Shown one piece after another: positions 29,157-63,579 of a stretch of 64,000 nt of DNA; position 1 is the stretch's first letter, and each line of letters starts with the position of its first letter. The stretch covers positions 132,432,001-132,496,000 of the forward strand of contig NC_083226.1 of the NCBI RefSeq assembly GCF_032191835.1, written 5' to 3'. The DNA is from Heteronotia binoei (lineage: Eukaryota). Below the pieces are notes generated by a model. The model did no database searches, was not told the DNA's origin, and saw only the letters and a list, made by a program, of their open reading frames with translations. Position numbers and translations under genes: made by a program.

Positions 29157-29706
29157 CACGGGTGGGGAACCTCTGTCCTGAGGGCCGTATGCAGCCCTTG
29201 AGGTCACTTGTTGTGGCCCTCAGGGATTGCTGGGCCGAACTGAGCCATGTGGCAGTCTCTCTGGGGTCTGGCTGGTCACGAGGATCGTGGGGCCCAGCCG
29301 TGCTGTGCAGCAGCCTCCCCAGGGCCAGGCAGGGATCACAGGACCTAGATGTACTGTGCGGCAGCCTCCCTGGGGCCTGGCTGGCCGGCCAGAATTGCTG
29401 CAGGGCCTGGAAAAGTTACTGTCACAGTTCAGTTTGCACTTGATTATCCCAGATGGTGTGGCCTAATATGCTACTGAGTTCCTGCTGGGCTTTTTCTACA
29501 AAAAATCCCGGGTTTGTGTGTGTGCCAAATTAGTCTCTCCCCACATGACTTCAAATAGAAAAACAATTATTTGTATTAATTTTGCCAACCTGAATCGTTC
29601 TCCCTTGGCGGAGCACTGTTTTTTAAGGTGATAATTTTTTATGGCCCGCAAATGATGTTATAAATATCCATATGGCCCTTGGCAGAAAAAAGGTTCCCCA
29701 CCCCTG
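29157..29706. mobile_element. hAT-type element (3' half repeated at about 50990-51350)
   Basis: GGGTGGGGAAC...GTTCCCCACCCCTG termini. Confidence 0.7.
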
Positions 29707-37783: not shown

Positions 37784-38834
37784 CTGTGCAATACAGTATA
37801 TGGAACTGTTTGTAACAGAAGACCAATGTGTATTACAGACCAATAGATTATCGACAATGGAACAGAAGTGACACTAAAATCTGATTATCTATGCCGGGGT
37901 CCTCAACATTTTTGGGCCTGTGGGCACCTTTAGAATTATGAGGCAGAGTGGTGAGTACAACCACAAAATGGATGCTACAGGAGGCACAGACAACCACAGA
38001 GGGAGCCCACCCTCAGGATAAAAGAGGGGCAATTAAAAAAAATGCAAAAGTGAGATATAATAAAACCAACACTATGGTATGCTGCTAAAACAATATTTTC
38101 TTAAAGACCAATCAAATATATCCCCAGAATTATGCAGGTTTTGTATGCAGCATTTTTGGGTTTGTGTGCAAATGTGAGAGCAGGCAACAGAAGCACTGAG
38201 CAGGCTGCAAAGGTTTTTTCTGGTCACATACACTAGAAGTGTCAGATGGCAGAGAGATTCATTCTCTGAGCCAATTCTGGGAGAACAGACAAAAAATGAA
38301 ATAAATTCAGCACTATCCCAGTGGGTCAGTGTTAAGTTTTGGTTAGCAAAGTCAATCTAGTTTGATTTAAAATTTTAGTTTTACTCTTAAAGCAGTAAGA
38401 AAGTAGCAGAACCATTTTGACAGCATTTTCACTTCCATGTAGCACAGCAGAAACCATAACAAATGTCAATATCACACTGAATTCTCCATGTACAGTGACC
38501 TTCCAAGAATATTTCAACCCATGTAAGACTACGGTTTTTCTCACAGAAAATAATGCAGACACTTGACAGGATGGATCTGGACCAATGTGGCTCTCTTTGA
38601 ATTTGGGGGTTTGTTTTAAGGTCAAACTACATATTACGATGTTCCATGGGTTGTCTAGATCCCCAAGATGATGGGTAACAGATCCAGCCACCCATAATGG
38701 TTTGTTTTACAAACTGCTTTTTTATTAGATTAAGAAAGCCACACAAAAGGCTATTCTATTCAAGTTGCATTAACATAAGGAGTTGAAGAGGTAAGATGCA
38801 TTTCAGGAAGGGAAAAAAAAGACCTCTCTCTTAC

Positions 38835-38945
38835 CAGATAGTAGCCAGTATGATAACCACTCATATACCAGGCTATTAACATACTTCCTAATGCTTCGTC
38901 ATCTTCTGACGAGTCTGGACTCAGAGGTGGTGGTGGTGGTATCAA
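38835..38945 (-). CDS. SMN1: SMN exon 6 (YG box)
   Basis: [37 protein letters not shown]; 111 nt. Confidence 0.97.
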
Positions 38946-44573: not shown

Positions 44574-44852
<279 letters not shown>

Positions 44853-46562: not shown

Positions 46563-47859
46563 GACTAGAGCAACACTTTTAAAATAACTGCTCTAATATC
46601 TTGCTCAAGGCTGCAAAAAGAAAGGCTGTCCTCAGCAGCTACATTGACTGAGAAACACATCTTGATAATTGCTGACACAGTTGCATGTCTTTTGGCTGCT
46701 TCCATCCATTTAAGAATGCACACAAGGGAAAGCACCATAAACTATCCAGAATCAGAACAAAATTGCAACGACTGCCATATCTGAATGTTGTCAATTACAG
46801 AATATTTTGTTAGAAAACTAAATTGGCAATACAAGATTAAACTATATTGCTTACAATGAATTCAATCACAAGAGAAATGATGACAATCTTGTCTGTATTG
46901 TATATTACTCAGTGATAATGTACTAAAAGGGGATTCTCCATCAGTGTGCCATATCAGAGACTGTCAGACTGAACAGGATGGACTGTATCCCATCTATTGA
47001 CAGCAATCTTTCCCACGTTCTCATTGTCCTACAACCCTGAAGGTTGCAGCAGAAACAACAATAAAGAACCATATTGACTAAGGGACTGAAGCAACAATAA
47101 AAAAAATCAAATGTCACTCTTCCTCCCTCTTCTACCAGCAAAACATCAGTTGAATATCATTTTATTGAGTTCCCAACTTTTTAAATTTCCCAGCTTTTAT
47201 GTAAAAAAACAAAAACCTGCTAGCCCCTTTTGCTGAAGAGATGTGCTTTTCTACTTATATCTCCACAACAAAAGAGAAGGGAAACATACTTGGGGGGGGG
47301 GAGCTAAAGCTGTGAATTTAAAGAACCAAATACACAGATTGTATTACTGATATAACAACAGTCAACTGCTGATTAAAACAGAATAGCCCTTGGTGGCAGG
47401 GTGAGGTGGGGGATGGCTGCTTCAAGAAGAGGAGGAAAGAAAAGGTCCTTGAAGGTGGGACCAGGAAAATCTGAACATTCCCAAACAAATGGCAACCATT
47501 CAGGCTTTACTGCAATATTTCCTGAAACTTTACAGCAGAAGCAAGTTTGGAAAACACTGAAGAAACACCAGGGAAAACCTAGATGATTAATTAATGGATG
47601 CTATGGAGAAGCAGGAGAAAAACACTTTCCGATAGTATCAACCCTAGGGCAAATAACGGGTGTGGAAATGGTCTAAGAGATGCTGCATCTGTGAATCACC
47701 GGGTTTTGGCCTGCCTGTTAAAGTGATTACAATCTCAACCCCATCCTTCCTTCCTTGAAAACTGTTACATCTGGAAATAAATTCTAGAGAGCAGCTTCCA
47801 TGGAAGCTTAAATCTCCACAGCTTACATTATGCACTAACACCACCAGGATGTGCTTTAC

Positions 47860-47931
47860 CTTGAAAGATGCAACTGCTTTATCATATGCCTTTATGAGGG
47901 CTGTATCATCCCATATATCAGAATCATCACT
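47860..47931 (-). CDS. SMN1: SMN exon 2a (Gemin2-binding region)
   Basis: [24 protein letters not shown]; 72 nt. Confidence 0.97.
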
Positions 47932-48014
47932 CTGCAGAGGAAAGAGAACAATACTGAGAGATTTATTTAGCCCATTTTAAAAAAAAATTATAAAAAGAGC
48001 TATGAACTAAATCC

Positions 48015-48232
48015 TATGACTGCCAACTCCATTTTGGGAAATTCCTGGGGATTTGGGAGGCAGAGGTTGAAGAGAGCAGCGTTTGGGGAGAAGAGTAAGC
48101 TCATCGGAGATATGATGCGTAAGAATCCACCCTCTGAACTTCCATTTCCTCTAGGGAAAGTTATATTTGTAGTCTGGGGATCAGCTGCAATTCCTGGAGA
48201 GCCCCAGGCCCCATCTAGAGGTTAGTAACCCT
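48015..48232 (-). mobile_element. MITE-like repeat (AGGGTTGCCA-type termini) in SMN intron 1
   Basis: Recognised common lizard/gecko repeat core ctccaggaattgcagctgatccccagactaca. Confidence 0.55.
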
Positions 48233-48269
48233 CAAACCAGATTACTGAAACAATGGGCACACCCTCTTA

Positions 48270-48940
48270 AATACTTCGATAGTGTGTTAAGACGCATGCT
48301 GTTATGTAACGCTCGCGATTCCAGTCGCCTCCTCCGATTCACCAGCAACACGCGACAAATACAACGCCACCGCACAAGGAAGGGCCCTCGAGAGCGATCC
48401 TCGCAAACGAAGGCGGGGGAAAGCCCTGCCGCGGAGCTCACGGGCAGTCCCACATACCTGCCCGGCCCCGCGCCTGAAGAGAATTGCTTCGTCCTCGCTT
48501 CGAGCAGCCATGGGGTTTTCTGGGGCCAGTCGACCAAGCAAGACGGCGCTCACTCAACAGGCCTCCAACGTTGCCGCCGCCATGGATACCTCATCAGCCA
48601 AGGACGGGGAGCGGGAGGAGCTACTGCCGCGGAGGCTTCAACGAGCGTGGCCGTCTCGTTCGCGTCGCTTGAGCAGAGATCGAATTACTGACCTCTACTG
48701 GCAAGGAGGCCTCGGCTTCTTCCCGGCCGCTTTATGAGGCGCTTCCTTTTAGGCAACACAGCAAAGCCTCTCGCGACAACGCGCGTCAAGTCAGGGATCC
48801 TGCTCAGAATTTCCTTTAGCTTTGCATAATCAGTTGAGCACGGGCAACCTTCGCTCTGATAATATCGACTTTTGACTTTATATATAGCTTTGTATTGCAA
48901 TGAGACACGCTGTTTCTTGTGTAGGCCTGCACAGGAGTTA
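48270..48940 (-). promoter_or_regulatory. SMN1: SMN CpG island / promoter
   Basis: High CpG density around exon 1; TATA-like TTTATATATA at 48877-48886; octamer-like CTTTGCAT at 48820-48827. Confidence 0.75.
48458..48511 (-). CDS. SMN1: SMN exon 1 coding part
   Basis: MAARSEDEAILFRRGAGQ|gtatgt; LFRRGxGQ motif conserved; total CDS 837 nt = 278 aa + stop. Confidence 0.9.
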
Positions 48941-49114
48941 TAAGCGACATTAAAATGGAATTTCAACTAGGAAAGACACGGACTCCTCTATCCAATATAT
49001 AGGGTTAACGGCGCCAAATCTGAATCTAGTTACGCAAAATTGAATATACACGATATTAATCGCATGAACTATTTTACATTACATAATATTTAAAATGGAA
49101 TGGTTTAAAAACAT

Positions 49115-49320
49115 TAGAATCATCATAAAATCATAGAGTTGGAAGAGACCTCCCCGGTCATCAGTCCAACCCCTTGCACAATACAGGAACTTCACAAATA
49201 CATCCCCTGTGACCCTTGCTCCATACACAGAAGATAGCAAAAACCTCCAGGATCCCTTGCCAAACTGTCCTGGATAAAATTGCTGCTTGTCCACTAAGTG
49301 GCAACCAGTATTTAACGGTT
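49115..49320 (-). mobile_element. CR1 3' tail (related copies about 63059-63250 minus, about 9495-9610 plus)
   Basis: atcatagagttggaagagacc...tccaaccc, with an ATTCTATG-type tail in reverse. Confidence 0.7.
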
Positions 49321-50042
49321 CAGACAAGGAATAAGCAGGCTGGAGGGCACTGTGGCCTAGTTCTTCCTATATAGATTTATAGTGGGTACTTACACTTTCT
49401 GTGTGACTCAGAGTCCAGTAGCAAAATATGTGGCAGCAGGGTAGGAGCTTTCATGAGTCACTACATGCTTCTTCACATCTGAAGAGTCCCTGCTCAGTTC
49501 TTTAGATTTGAAGTAGTGACTCAAGGAAACTCAAGTCATGCCAAGCCCTTCTGTCTTCCACCATCCTGCCACATATTTTGTTAGTCTTTTTACTGCCTGC
49601 CTGCTAGCTAACACACTGACCTGAACAGGATATCTGATTAGTACAGATATATACAAAACCAAACAATGATATAGAGAGGAGGTGGCAATTTATAGTATAT
49701 GTTTGTATGTAATGAAGCAGTTTGCTCCTCTAGTATCAGTGTGATTTGGTTTAGCCTTATTGGGTGGAGCTCTAGTTTCAGTTTCCAGTTTTGCATAGTT
49801 GTTGGAATTGTCTTCTTGCAAATAAACAGTTGATGTTTTGAGACTGCTTTTCTCTGTTGAATGAGTGGTCCAACCTGGGAACTCACAGCAGAAGGGGGAC
49901 ACTACAGTGGCTATAGGGTGTCCTCCTGCTTATGGGACATACTAAAACTAGGAACAGTGATTGTCCTTAGACTATACATGATTGCCAATAGAGAATCAAC
50001 GCTTGCCCATAGGGAATGGAAATTAGGCTTAACCTAATTTCG

Positions 50043-50346
50043 TTAGCTTTGCATAATCAGTTGAGCACGGGCGACCTTCACTCTGATAATATCGACTTTT
50101 GACTTTATATATAGCTTTGTATTGCAATGAGACATGCTGTTTCTTGTGTAGGCTTGCACAGAATTTACAAGGGCCCTTTCTTGTGCGGTGGAGGCGATTG
50201 GAATCGAGAGCGTTACATAATAGCATGCGTCTTAACACACTATCAATGTATTTAAGAGGGTAATCTGGTTTGAGGGTTACTAATCTCTAGATGGGGCCTG
50301 GGGCTCTCCAGGAATTGCAGCTGATCCCCAGACTACAGATATAACT
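50043..50346. repeat. Chimeric duplicate of the SMN upstream region (direct) and intron 1 (inverted)
   Basis: 50043-50161 = 48816-48934 (4 mismatches in 119 nt); 50170-50346 = reverse complement of 48159-48388 with 36-nt and 17-nt deletions. Confidence 0.95.
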
Positions 50347-51563
50347 AAACATGACTGCCAACAGAGAATCCACACTTGTCATAGGGAATAAGAGAGACCA
50401 CACTTCCCCTAAGGACATAGACTATACATGATTGCCAATAGAGAATTCATCTTTGCCCCTAGGGACTAATGAATACGTCTGCCCATAGGAAATAGCGGAA
50501 ATCACACTTGCCCTAAGGCAAGCAATTGTCCATAGACTATACATGATTACCAATAGAGAATGCACATAGGGAATAATTGGGACCATGCTTTCCCATAGTG
50601 AATAATTGGGACCACGCTTCCCCCTTTATTTTACTTTATTACCCTTTCTTCCCCCATTTATTTCCCTTTCTTTCCATTTCTCCCAGTATTTATTTCCTTC
50701 TTACCCCCTTTATTTTGCTTTCCCTCTTTTTGTTTCTCCCCCCCCCTTTATTTTACTTTATTATCCTTTCTTCCCCCTTTTCAGTTCCCTTTTCCATTTC
50801 TCCCACTATTTCCCTTTCTTCCCATTTCTTTATTTCCCTTCCTTCTTCCCTCTCTCTCTGGAGTAGTGCGCATTGTGAAGGACTACTGCCACGGTATATG
50901 AGTGCATTTAAAGGTCTGCTGGGAGCAGCTGCAGTTTTGACATGAAGGGAGGGAGGGATAGCAGGGATGAGGGGTGGGAGCCAGCTACCATCAGTTCAAT
51001 TTGCACTTGATTATACTAGATAATGTGGCCTAATATGCTAATAAGTATGTGACCTAATATGGTAATATTAGGAAATGTGGTTAAAATGCTAATGAGTTCC
51101 TGCTGGGCTTTTTTCTACAAAAAAAGTCCTGGACCTAGGCATTTGCCTAGAGCGGCAGGTCATGTGTGTGTGCCAAATCAGGCTTTCCCCACATGACTTC
51201 AAGTAGAAAAACAATTATTTGCATTAATTTTGCCGGCCTGAATTGTTCTCCCTTGGCGGGGCACTGTTTTTTTAAGTTGATAATATGGCCCGTGAATGCA
51301 GTTATAAATATCCAAATGGCCCTTGACAGAAAAAAAGTTCTCCACCCCTGCTATACATGATTGCCAACAGATAATCCACACTTGCCCATAAGGATTAATG
51401 GAGACCACTCTTGCCCATAGGGAATAATTAGGACCACACTTGGCCATAGAGAATAATGGAGAGCAGGCTTGCCCTAAGAACAACAATTGCCAATTTACAT
51501 GATTGCCAATAGAAAATCCACACTTGCCCATACGGATTAATGGATTCCATGCTTGCCCAAGGG

Positions 51564-52212
51564 CAGTGGTCCCCAACTTTTTTGGCCCCAGGGACCTGCC
51601 CAAGGGCTGGCCCACCCACCGTGGCCCCAGGGCCTGCAAGGTGGGGGCACCACATTCAGCCTCCCCCCCATCCCCCAGTGCCTCCTCCTGTTCTCCCATG
51701 ACACCTCCTCCCCCCCGCCACCCACAGCACCTCCTCCCCCCTCCATTCGTACAAGTTTAAGGCTTCCGAAGGCAATGGTGAAGTGCCTCCCCGGCTCTTT
51801 AAAGGCCGACCCCTCCCCGCCACTGATTGGTAGGGAAGCCACAGCAGTAGCGTGAGCAACCAGCTGAAAAAGCCACGCTGCCCTTGTCTCCTTCCCACTT
51901 CCTTCCTGGACATGGGAAGGAGGCAAGGGCAGTGTGGCTTTTTCAGCCGGTTGCTCGACCTGCTGCCCGGTTTCCTTGCTGATCGGGGGGGGGGGGGGGG
52001 CGGGGATAGGTTGGCCTTTAAAGAGCCTGGGAGGCACTTCACCAGAAGGCCTTAAACTTGTACAAATGGAGGGAGGAGGAGGCACTGCGGGGGCGGGTGG
52101 GGCTGCGAGGCTGCATGTTGCTGCGGGGGGCGGGGCAGCAGGGCAGTGGGGCCCTGTTGCCAACACGCCACAGACCAGTACCAGTCCACAGCCCGGGGGT
52201 TGGGTACCCCTG
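51564..52212. mobile_element. Fold-back hAT (MER20/Charlie-like) element (related ends at 60593-60805)
   Basis: CAGTGGTCCCCAAC...GTACCCCTG; near-TSD CCCAAGGG/CCATAGGG; internal inverted repeat about 51720-52090. Confidence 0.75.
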
Positions 52213-52584
52213 CCATAGGGAATAATGTAGACCACACTTACTTGTAAGCACAGCAATTGTCCATAGAAAAATGCAAATAGAAAATGGTTACCTACAGGAA
52301 ATGGAGAGCACCCTTGCCCATAGAGAATAATGGAGACCACATTATCTAAGGACAGCAATCGCACATAGACTATGCATGATTGCCAACTGAGAATGCATGA
52401 TTGCTCATAGGGAATAATGGAGATCACACTTGCCCATACGGGAAAATGGAGAGCAGGCTTGCCCTAAGGACTTTGATTGCCTATAAACTATACATTATAG
52501 CCAATAAAGAATGCACAGTTGCCCATATGAAAAAATGGTAACCACGACTGCCCTTAGGAAATTAGGCTTGCCCATAGGGAATAA

Positions 52585-62055: not shown

Positions 62056-62095
62056 AATTGACAGTGGGATTTACTTCCAAGTAAACGGTGGGAGG

Positions 62096-62290
62096 GACGG
62101 GGGCTCAGTGGTAGAGCATCTGCTTGGGAAGCAGAAGGTCCCAGGTTCAATCCCTGGCATCTCCAAAAAAGGGTCCAGGCAAATAGGTGTGAAAAACCTC
62201 AGCTTGAGACGCTGGAGAGCTGCTGCCAGTCTGAGAAGACAATACTGACTTTGATGGACCAAAGGTCTGATTTAGTATAAGGCAGCTCCA
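62096..62290 (+). mobile_element. tRNA-derived SINE (Squam2/AnolisSINE2-type) with good A and B boxes
   Basis: A box GGCTCAGTGG 62102-62111; B box GGTTCAATCC 62144-62153; LINE-like 3' tail. Confidence 0.85.
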
Positions 62291-62570: not shown

Positions 62571-63579
62571 TTCTCCTGTTGCTGCCTTACATCAACATGC
62601 TTCCGCCCATTGAAGTCAACCATTTGTGAGCATCCAACTATGTACAGAATCAGGCTTTTGCTCTCTGTATAAACAGAAGTCTACTGACACCTTACAGACT
62701 GCAGCATATGCTTCCATGGACTACTAGACCACTTCTTTACTTGCAGTGATTGGCTTCTCATTATCTAGATTGTTTAAATGTAAGAGGCAAAAATAAACAG
62801 CAGGGTGAAGGGGTCATGACATAATGGTGAAAAATAACTATAAATTAAAATCAGGTGGGTCCCCCCAGAATGGTAACTTAAGCTTGCTATGCCTGTTTGG
62901 ACCTTGCATCTGTTAAATATCTATTATGTTGTATGCTAATTTGCTGCCCACCTTCTACCTATAAGTATGGACTGGTAACTTCCATTTCATTCTTCTTCCA
63001 TTCTGAAGAAGTGTGTGTGCACATAAAAAGCTTATTCCTCAAATAGTACTTTAAAACTATAGAATCACAGAGTTGGAAGGGACCTCCAGGGTCATCTAGT
63101 CCAACCCTCTGCACAACAAAGGAAACTTACAAATACTTACCCCCCTAAATTCATACCTCCTTTCCGCCTAATTTCACAGAAGCAGCATTGCTGTCAGATG
63201 GCCATCTAGCTCTGTTTAAAAACCTCCAAAGGAGAGCTGACCACCTCCCTTTGTTGGACTCGAACTTTGTATACATTAAAATCTAATTTAAAATGTACAG
63301 TCCATAAATTAGTTTTGCTAAGCTATACTGGTCGGGGAGTCTCAAACTATTTTGGCAAAAGTAGGGAAAAGTTTCTATATTTTATTAGTTTTCAATTTTT
63401 CATTATTTATTTCTGTACTTTCTGCATTTCATGGCCCAGTGCAGCGCTATGCAAATCGGATTTATTAACGAATAAATTTGAGTAAGATCGTAGCGTTCAT
63501 TTTCTACTGAAATAAGCAGAATTTCTGCAGAAGCCTAGTTTTAAGAGTTTAGGGACAGCGAAGCAGAGCTGTCAGGCAA

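What the first reader, a model, noticed from the sequence alone, without database searches (positions are those of the whole stretch)
50043..50346. Rearranged duplicate of the SMN promoter fused to inverted SMN intron 1, embedded in a minisatellite
Seen: 50043-50161 is a direct copy of 48816-48934 (4 transitions in 119 nt, two of them CpG decay). After 8 nt of unmatched junction sequence, 50170-50346 is an inverted copy of intron 1 (48159-48388) with 36-nt and 17-nt deletions at short microhomologies. Exon 1 itself is skipped. Known: this pattern is typical of replication template switching (FoSTeS/MMBIR), and the human SMN region is rearrangement-prone. Inference: a recent, independent instability at the SMN 5' end. 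Exon 1 now sits between inverted repeats and could be flipped, and the copied octamer/PSE/TATA block is placed in front of intron-1 sequence as a possible new transcription unit or factor decoy.
Basis: partly seen in the sequence, partly recalled or inferred. Interest (0 to 1): 0.7.

Follow-up and report, generated by a model that had tools for sequence, protein, structure and literature searches.

The report
Patchwork repair scar copied from SMN
About 1.5 kb upstream of a gecko's SMN gene, a break in a short tandem repeat was patched long ago with about 310 bases copied from two nearby SMN stretches, one turned round; this is a clear example of a known DNA-repair accident, SMN is intact, and nothing shows that the copy does anything.

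Summary
50036-50172 is a direct copy of 48808-48945 (core 96.6% identical). 50170-50346 is an inverted copy of 48159-48388 (95.5%), lacking 36 nt and 17 nt. No third copy exists in the 64 kb window.

The gene is SMN on the minus strand (Pfam on three exons). Donor 2 lies inside the 526-nt intron 1. Donor 1 lies 297-434 nt upstream of the start codon. Both sit in the SMN CpG island.

The patch interrupts a degenerate 29-nt minisatellite. All three joints show microhomology of 6, 2 and 3 nt. The left joint also carries a perfect 9-bp snap-back hairpin, one of only seven in the window.

I read it as a multi-template, microhomology-mediated templated insertion (MMBIR / serial replication slippage type) that repaired a break in the minisatellite.

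It is not recent: divergence is 3.5-4.7% and 4 of 11 CpGs are lost, roughly 10^7 years. The longest perfect identity between the inverted arms is 53 nt, so flipping of exon 1 is unlikely. No evidence supports activity of the copied octamer/PSE-like/TATA block.

Reads and sister-species loci could not be obtained, so assembly support, polymorphism and polarity remain untested. Ordinary, low interest.

The parts
50036..50172 (+). Direct copy of donor 1: the upstream flank of the SMN CpG island with an octamer-like site, a PSE-like stretch, a TATA box and about 36 nt beyond.
   Evidence: Identity is 93.4% over 137 nt; the core 50043-50161 is 96.6% identical with 4 transitions.
50170..50346 (-). 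Inverted copy of donor 2 (middle of SMN intron 1). It lacks 36 nt and 17 nt that are present in the donor.
   Evidence: 169 of 177 aligned positions are identical; K2P 0.047; longest perfect run 53 nt.
48808..48945 (+). Donor 1, 297-434 nt upstream of the SMN start codon. It holds an octamer-like site at 48822-48829, a TATA box at 48879-48886 and, between them, a stretch resembling a proximal sequence element.
   Evidence: Sequence; alignments; sister note s1-340783.
48159..48388 (-). Donor 2, 230 nt in the middle of SMN intron 1. It starts 69 nt downstream of the 5' splice site.
   Evidence: intron limits read.
48333..48368 (.). 36-nt stretch of donor 2 skipped in the copy, bounded by GG/GG.
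48246..48262 (.). 17-nt stretch of donor 2 skipped in the copy, bounded by GT/GT.
50019..50041 (+). Left joint (J1): a perfect hairpin with a 9-bp stem and 5-nt loop. Its left arm is array sequence. The last 6 nt of its right arm (AATTTC) are shared with the start of donor 1 (48808-48813).
   Evidence: (only 7 such hairpins in 64 kb).
50161..50179 (+). Middle joint (J2): donor 1 fades out with 4 mismatches in 11 nt. Donor 2 starts at 50170, sharing AG with donor 1. The switch lies at a 10-nt palindrome centred on GGGCCC.
50344..50346 (+). Right joint (J3): ACT is shared between the end of donor 2 and the resuming array unit.
49960..50035 (.). Left flank: degenerate minisatellite units.
50347..50623 (.). 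Right flank: degenerate minisatellite, 29-nt period. Further patches lie at 51340-51557 and 52213-52540.
48458..48511 (-). SMN exon 1 coding part (18 codons), intact. It lies between the two donors and is absent from the copy.
   Evidence: tblastn with squamate SMN proteins.
47932..48457 (-). SMN intron 1 (526 nt), GT...AG.
   Evidence: Pfam SMN_G2-BD on the exon 2a frame.
48200..49100 (.). CpG island (CpG observed/expected about 0.8-1.3) that contains both donors. The DNA around the copy has o/e of about 0-0.3.

Best explanation
The 311-316 nt patch at about 50028-50346 is the scar of one old repair event. A double-strand break or collapsed fork inside the 29-nt minisatellite was healed by a low-processivity, microhomology-primed copying process of the MMBIR / serial-replication-slippage / synthesis-dependent MMEJ kind. 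The inferred order is as follows. The broken 3' end snapped back on itself and copied 9 nt, making the hairpin at 50019-50041. Its new end AATTTC annealed at 48808 and copied 137 nt of the SMN upstream region, with errors near the end. It then dissociated and re-annealed through AG on the opposite strand at 48388, at a GGGCCC palindrome. It copied intron-1 sequence back to 48159, slipping forward twice (36 nt at GG, 17 nt at GT). Finally it rejoined the other broken end through ACT. The donors were only read, so SMN stayed intact. The patch has since decayed as ordinary, probably methylated, non-functional DNA. Shown: the two copies, their orientation, the gaps, the microhomologies, the hairpin, the array on both sides and the CpG asymmetry. 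Inferred: the order of steps, the enzyme class, single-event origin, the direction donor to patch, the age, and the lack of function.
For: Both donors are 1.1-1.9 kb away, unique in the window and intact. Array units flank the patch on both sides. Microhomology is 6, 2 and 3 nt at J1, J2 and J3, within the 2-12 nt range reported for germline and tumour MMBIR-type templated insertions, which include multi-template events (PMC8421209). A perfect 9-bp hairpin lies exactly at J1. Only 7 such hairpins occur in 64 kb, so the chance of one overlapping a given 25-nt junction window is about 0.003. Internal skips occur at 2-nt repeats. Mismatches cluster within 12 nt of segment ends: 7 in 45 positions against 10 in 266 elsewhere, Fisher p 0.005. 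The two pieces have similar divergence (K2P 0.035 and 0.047), which fits one event. Direction: the donors sit in a CpG island. The patch is a CpG-richer islet (o/e 0.6-0.8) in CpG-poor DNA, has lost 4 of 11 donor CpGs, and most differences are C/G in the donor against T/A in the patch. The divergence itself argues against an assembly artefact, which would give identical copies.
Against: Copied tracts of 137 and 177 nt from more than 1 kb away are longer and more distant than typical polymerase-theta snap-back insertions. The mismatch clustering partly reflects how far I chose to extend the alignments. The 2-3 nt microhomologies are individually weak evidence.
Confidence: 0.68

Rival explanations
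1. Capture of free DNA fragments. Two short double-stranded pieces released from the SMN CpG island (for example small extrachromosomal circles or over-replicated or excised fragments) were ligated into the break by end joining, one of them in reverse.
For: The donors are two discrete short pieces from a CpG island. The short microhomologies fit alternative end joining as well.
Against: The 36- and 17-nt internal skips at 2-nt repeats and the snap-back hairpin whose end overlaps donor 1 by 6 nt look like polymerase copying, not ligation of ready-made pieces. The skips could, however, be later deletions.
Confidence: 0.12
2. Remnant of a once larger duplication of the SMN 5' region, analogous in kind to the human SMN1/SMN2 duplication, later broken up by inversion and deletions.
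For: Human SMN lies in a duplication-prone region (general knowledge). Exon 1 and other sequence are missing from the copy.
Against: It needs at least a duplication, an inversion of one part and several deletions, where one event suffices. Homology stops sharply at both ends, where the same minisatellite continues. There are no other SMN-derived fragments anywhere in the window.
Confidence: 0.08
3. Both segments belong to a dispersed repeat or were carried by a transposable element (Helitron-type or other gene-fragment capture).
For: Fragment capture can join pieces in mixed orientation. The window holds other repeats nearby.
Against: There are only two copies of each segment in 64 kb. No terminal inverted repeats or target-site duplication are present. 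The hairpin at 50019-50041 is A+T-rich and overlaps the donor homology, so it is not a Helitron end. Nothing was found in Rfam. Genome-wide copy number could not be measured.
Confidence: 0.06
4. Assembly artefact, such as a chimeric read or a mis-join inside the minisatellite.
For: Tandem arrays are error-prone to assemble, and no read support could be obtained.
Against: The copies differ by 17 substitutions and 3 indels with a CpG-decay pattern. A chimera of reads from the real SMN locus would be identical to it. There are no gaps.
Confidence: 0.04

Closest known systems
MMBIR-type templated insertions (MMB-TI) and serial replication slippage / FoSTeS x2 events described in human germline and tumours (PMC8421209; PMC2583991)
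   Same: The insertion is copied from nearby intact templates. There is more than one template, one of them inverted. Microhomology of 2-6 nt lies at every joint, mismatches lie near the joints, and a palindrome and repeat array sit at the site.
   Different: This is a gecko germline event fixed in the assembly and millions of years old. The copied tracts (137 and 177 nt) and the template distance (1.1-1.9 kb) lie between the short, within-100-bp yeast-type events and the 100-kb-scale FoSTeS events of the reviews. No pedigree or population evidence is available.
Polymerase-theta-mediated end joining / synthesis-dependent MMEJ with snap-back synthesis (PMC4912351, PMC2943611, PMC5728401; titles and abstracts seen)
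   Same: A short inverted self-copy forms a hairpin at the break end and creates a new microhomology used for the next annealing step.
   Different: By my own knowledge, templated insertions in those systems are usually tens of nt and copied from within tens of nt of the break. Here only the 9-nt hairpin fits that scale; the two long tracts do not.
Human SMN1/SMN2 inverted segmental duplication
   Same: It concerns the same gene and involves inverted orientation.
   Different: The human case duplicates whole genes over hundreds of kb (general knowledge). Here 311 nt of non-coding sequence were copied, no exon is included, and SMN remains single-copy in the window.
Compact type-3 RNA polymerase III promoters (H1/RPPH1-like, head-to-head with a Pol II gene)
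   Same: The copied donor 1 has an octamer-like site, a PSE-like stretch and a TATA box within about 90 nt, head-to-head with SMN (sister note s1-340783).
   Different: No Rfam family matches downstream. The 167-nt candidate RNA shows no structure signal (z -0.76). PSE identity rests on resemblance recalled from memory, and no expression or Pol III occupancy data exist.

Membership tests
Microhomology-mediated templated insertion (MMBIR / serial replication slippage / FoSTeS) | The inserted sequence is a copy of nearby sequence whose original stays in place. | tested here: met
   The donors 48808-48945 and 48159-48388 are intact, 1.1-1.9 kb from the patch.
Microhomology-mediated templated insertion (MMBIR / serial replication slippage / FoSTeS) | Microhomology at each joint. 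| tested here: met
   AATTTC (6 nt), AG (2 nt) and ACT (3 nt). The range reported in PMC8421209 is 2-12 nt.
Microhomology-mediated templated insertion (MMBIR / serial replication slippage / FoSTeS) | Serial switches, with possible change of strand. | tested here: met
   A hairpin self-copy, then a direct tract, then an inverted tract with two internal skips.
Microhomology-mediated templated insertion (MMBIR / serial replication slippage / FoSTeS) | Error-prone synthesis near the joints. | tested here: inconclusive
   7 mismatches in 45 junction-proximal positions against 10 in 266 interior positions, p 0.005. The ends of the alignments were chosen by me, and later decay cannot be separated from copying errors.
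Microhomology-mediated templated insertion (MMBIR / serial replication slippage / FoSTeS) | An empty site exists in relatives or other individuals. | not testable with these tools
Polymerase-theta end joining (TMEJ / SD-MMEJ) | Snap-back or loop-out priming at the break end. | tested here: met
   Perfect 9-bp stem, 5-nt loop at J1; 7 such hairpins in 64 kb.
Polymerase-theta end joining (TMEJ / SD-MMEJ) | Templated insertions are short and copied from the immediate flanks. | tested here: not met
   The tracts are 137 and 177 nt, copied from 1.1-1.9 kb away.
Inverted repeats able to drive NAHR inversion | A long uninterrupted identity tract. The experiments cited in PMC2583991 contrasted 232 with 134 bp of uninterrupted homology. 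| tested here: not met
   The longest perfect run between the arms is 53 nt, and the arms are interrupted by 36- and 17-nt gaps.
Active type-3 Pol III transcription unit (the copy) | Octamer/DSE, PSE and TATA at fixed spacing. | tested here: inconclusive
   The octamer-like site and TATA are unchanged in the copy. Two substitutions (50073, 50080) fall at about -63 and -56, in the PSE-like interval. No PSE model was available.
Active type-3 Pol III transcription unit (the copy) | A T-run terminator at a short distance, and a transcript. | tested here: not met
   The first TTTT after the predicted start (about 50136) is at 50629, about 495 nt away. No expression data are available.
Transposable element / dispersed repeat | Multiple copies, terminal repeats, target-site duplication. 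| tested here: not met
   There are only two copies in 64 kb and no terminal repeats or duplication at the ends. Genome-wide copy number was not testable.
SMN gene (identity of the donor locus) | Gemin2-binding, Tudor and YG-box domains in order on one strand. | tested here: met
   Pfam PF20636 (5e-15), PF06003 (9e-27) and PF20635 (1e-23) on three minus-strand exon frames. Seven exon-sized tblastn matches to squamate SMN proteins.

The most novel reading that the evidence does not exclude
The copied octamer/PSE-like/TATA block is a working type-3 Pol III promoter. From the patch it would then drive a new chimeric RNA of up to about 500 nt. Its first about 36 nt would match the candidate RNA next to SMN, and the rest would carry SMN intron-1 sequence in the sense orientation. 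Alternatively, the 177-nt inverted arms support a rare polymorphic inversion that switches SMN exon 1 off.
Probability: 0.04. Interest if true: 0.55.

Novelty: new member of a known kind. Interest (0 to 1): 0.22.

Why it matters
It matters only modestly. It is a clean, fully resolvable example in a reptile germline of a multi-step templated insertion. One locus shows a snap-back hairpin, two long templated tracts, a strand switch at a palindrome and two internal slippages. That makes it useful as an illustration that the same repair signatures seen in human patients and tumours shape non-mammalian genomes. It also shows that minisatellites are the breaking sites while nearby open CpG-island DNA serves as template. 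It does not indicate any instability or second copy of SMN itself. For annotation, the patch should not be taken for a second SMN promoter or exon.

Tried and rejected
Local scripts only scanned the window file as a target.

2. Relatives by junction-spanning ORF: the 69-aa ORF across the patch had no hit.

3. Relatives by SMN protein: the Tudor exon was searched by reference and against the representatives library. A Naja naja SMN model then retrieved squamate SMN proteins. The closest were only about 81-88% identical to the window's exons, so no sister species is on hand.

4. Exons were searched one by one by reference.

5. Rfam, at gathering thresholds and then at E up to 10, gave nothing credible in donors or patch.

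6. Folding of the candidate 167-nt RNA (z -0.76) and of the chimeric RNA (z +1.12) gave no structure signal.

7. I looked for a template for the 8-nt 'filler' at J2. An 8-mer match at 48805-48812 exists but is within chance expectation. I prefer decayed donor-1 sequence.

8. A Helitron end at the J1 hairpin was rejected: the stem is A+T-rich, there is no CTRR end, and it overlaps the donor homology.

9. Earlier-findings searches by sequence and by words gave no further copies.

Full report
WHAT IS THERE

The region was read directly and compared with itself. The repeat finder reports a 141-nt direct pair (48811-48951 / 50038-50178, 91% ungapped). It also reports three collinear inverted pairs: 48159-48245 / 50260-50346 at 98%, 48261-48336 / 50186-50261 at 92%, and 48367-48388 / 50170-50191 at 95%. 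A gapped alignment joins the three inverted pairs into one arm with gaps of 36 and 17 nt in the distal copy. blastn of each piece against the whole 64-kb window finds no third copy, with E-values of 6e-55 and 2e-59 for the two matches.

THE GENE

SMN lies on the minus strand. Motif hits located the exons. Pfam then confirmed three exon frames by reference: the Gemin2-binding domain (47776-47976, 5e-15), the SMN Tudor domain (44574-44813, 9e-27) and the YG box (38763-38945, 1e-23). tblastn with squamate SMN proteins places seven exon-sized matches from 48511 down to 37733.
- The coding part of exon 1 is 48511-48458, followed by GT.
- Exon 2a starts at 47931 after a pyrimidine tract and AG.
- Intron 1 is therefore 526 nt.
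- Donor 2 (48159-48388) is the middle of intron 1.
- Donor 1 (48808-48945) lies 297-434 nt upstream of the ATG.

Exons were searched one at a time by reference. The best database SMN proteins are only about 81-88% identical, so no close relative was at hand.

CONTEXT OF THE COPY

The patch interrupts a degenerate tandem array with a 29-nt period. Array patches lie at 49960-50035, 50344-50623, 51340-51565 and 52213-52540. The array sequence runs up to the left joint and resumes at the right joint. The donors lie in a CpG island (48200-49100, observed/expected about 0.8-1.3). The DNA around the patch has values of 0-0.3, and the patch itself 0.6-0.8.

THE JOINTS

J1 is the left joint.
- Array sequence ends in a stretch that forms the left arm of a perfect hairpin (50019-50041, 9-bp stem, 5-nt loop; first flagged).
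- The last six bases of the right arm, AATTTC, are also the first six bases of donor 1 (48808-48813).
- Only seven hairpins of this quality exist in the whole window. One sitting exactly on a joint by chance has a probability of a few per thousand.

J2 is the middle joint.
- Donor 1 is copied cleanly to 50161 and then with 4 mismatches in 11 nt to 50172.
- Donor 2 begins at 50170, so AG is shared.
- The switch lies on a 10-nt palindrome around GGGCCC.

J3 is the right joint.
- ACT (50344-50346) is shared by the end of donor 2 and the resuming array unit.

Inside the inverted tract, the two skipped stretches are bounded by GG/GG and GT/GT.

MECHANISM

These features fit the accepted signature of microhomology-primed serial template switching:
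- donors that are nearby and intact;
- several tracts, one of them inverted;
- 2-6 nt of microhomology at every joint;
- internal slippage at 2-nt repeats;
- a self-templated hairpin that creates the next microhomology;
- mismatches concentrated near the tract ends (7 in 45 positions against 10 in 266, p 0.005, with the caveat that I set the alignment ends).

The review PMC2583991 describes FoSTeS and serial replication slippage, the latter for rearrangements of 21 bp to 10 kb, and notes palindromes and repeats as stimulating architecture. PMC8421209 reports that most junctions of germline templated insertions in two individuals carry at least 1 bp of microhomology. In tumour samples it reports junction microhomology of mostly 2-12 bp, and multi-template events. 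Snap-back synthesis is described for polymerase theta and SD-MMEJ (titles and abstracts). The long tracts and the kilobase distance go beyond what I know of typical polymerase-theta insertions. I therefore file the event under the broader MMBIR / serial-slippage class and leave the enzyme open.

DIRECTION AND AGE

Without an outgroup the direction is inferred. Three observations support copying from the SMN side into the array:
- The distal element splits an array.
- All junction signatures sit at its borders.
- It is a CpG-richer islet in CpG-poor DNA that has lost 4 of the 11 donor CpGs, and most other differences are C/G in the donor against T/A in the patch.

The two tracts have similar K2P distances (0.035 and 0.047), which fits one event. 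Excluding CpG-related sites, about 7 differences remain in roughly 270 nt, or about 2.6%. With squamate neutral rates of the order of 1e-9 per site per year (my general knowledge, not a tool result), this gives roughly 5-25 million years. The event is not recent. The same divergence makes an assembly chimera unlikely.

CONSEQUENCES

SMN is untouched.

The inverted arms bracket 48389-50169, which holds exon 1, the upstream region and the candidate Pol III unit. They share at most 53 nt of uninterrupted identity and are broken by two gaps. The review read stresses that efficient homologous recombination needs long uninterrupted identity, citing cell-culture experiments that contrasted 232 with 134 bp of uninterrupted homology. 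An inversion here would also detach exon 1 from an essential single-copy gene. Flipping is therefore improbable and would be selected against.

In the copied promoter block the octamer-like site and the TATA box are unchanged. Two substitutions fall at about -63 and -56, in the PSE-like interval. The first TTTT lies about 495 nt downstream. Neither the candidate 167-nt RNA at the original (z -0.76) nor the chimeric RNA (z +1.12) shows a structure signal, and Rfam finds nothing. A plus-strand transcript from the patch would carry intron-1 sequence in the sense orientation, so it would not be antisense to SMN. I conclude the patch is most likely inert. Whether the original block is a true type-3 Pol III promoter is the subject of sister note s1-340783 and stays open. 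CpG retention through 48900-49100, in DNA of only 35% G+C, is at least compatible with an active, unmethylated element there.

WHAT COULD NOT BE DONE

- No DNA runs were found.

Assembly support, polymorphism, genome-wide copy number, sister-species presence, methylation and expression are all untested.

VERDICT

This is a real, well-preserved but ordinary repair scar. It is a new instance of a known kind of rearrangement, of low interest beyond its value as a clear example.

Noticed in passing
window 48879-49075 (+): An octamer-like site (48822-48829), a PSE-like stretch and a TATA box (48879-48886) are followed by about 167 nt up to the first TTTT (49072-49075). CpG observed/expected stays at about 1.0-1.3 through 48900-49100 although G+C is only 35%, which suggests an unmethylated, possibly active element. 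There is no Rfam match and no folding signal (z -0.76). It is the subject of sister note s1-340783.
   Followed up: partly
window 48556-48585 (-): A short upstream ORF of 9 codons starting ATGGCGGCG lies in the presumed SMN 5' leader, 45 nt upstream of the SMN start codon.
   Followed up: no
window 62093-62165 (+): A tRNA-like gene: Rfam tRNA 52 bits; ARAGORN calls tRNA-Pro with anticodon GGG. It could be a real tRNA or the head of a tRNA-derived SINE.
   Followed up: no
window 49125-49207 and 63059-63142: An 84-nt stretch is shared at 82% identity, probably a fragment of a dispersed SINE-like repeat. It lies between SMN and the patch.
   Followed up: no
window 50992-51350 and 29425-29706: A dispersed repeat of about 270-330 nt (79-87% identity) is inserted in the same minisatellite, next to a pyrimidine-rich low-complexity block at 50620-50860. 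The array has been interrupted more than once.
   Followed up: no
window 49419-49583: Two nested imperfect inverted repeats (29-nt arms at 83% and 20-nt arms at 85%) form a hairpin-like element of about 165 nt, possibly a MITE remnant.
   Followed up: no
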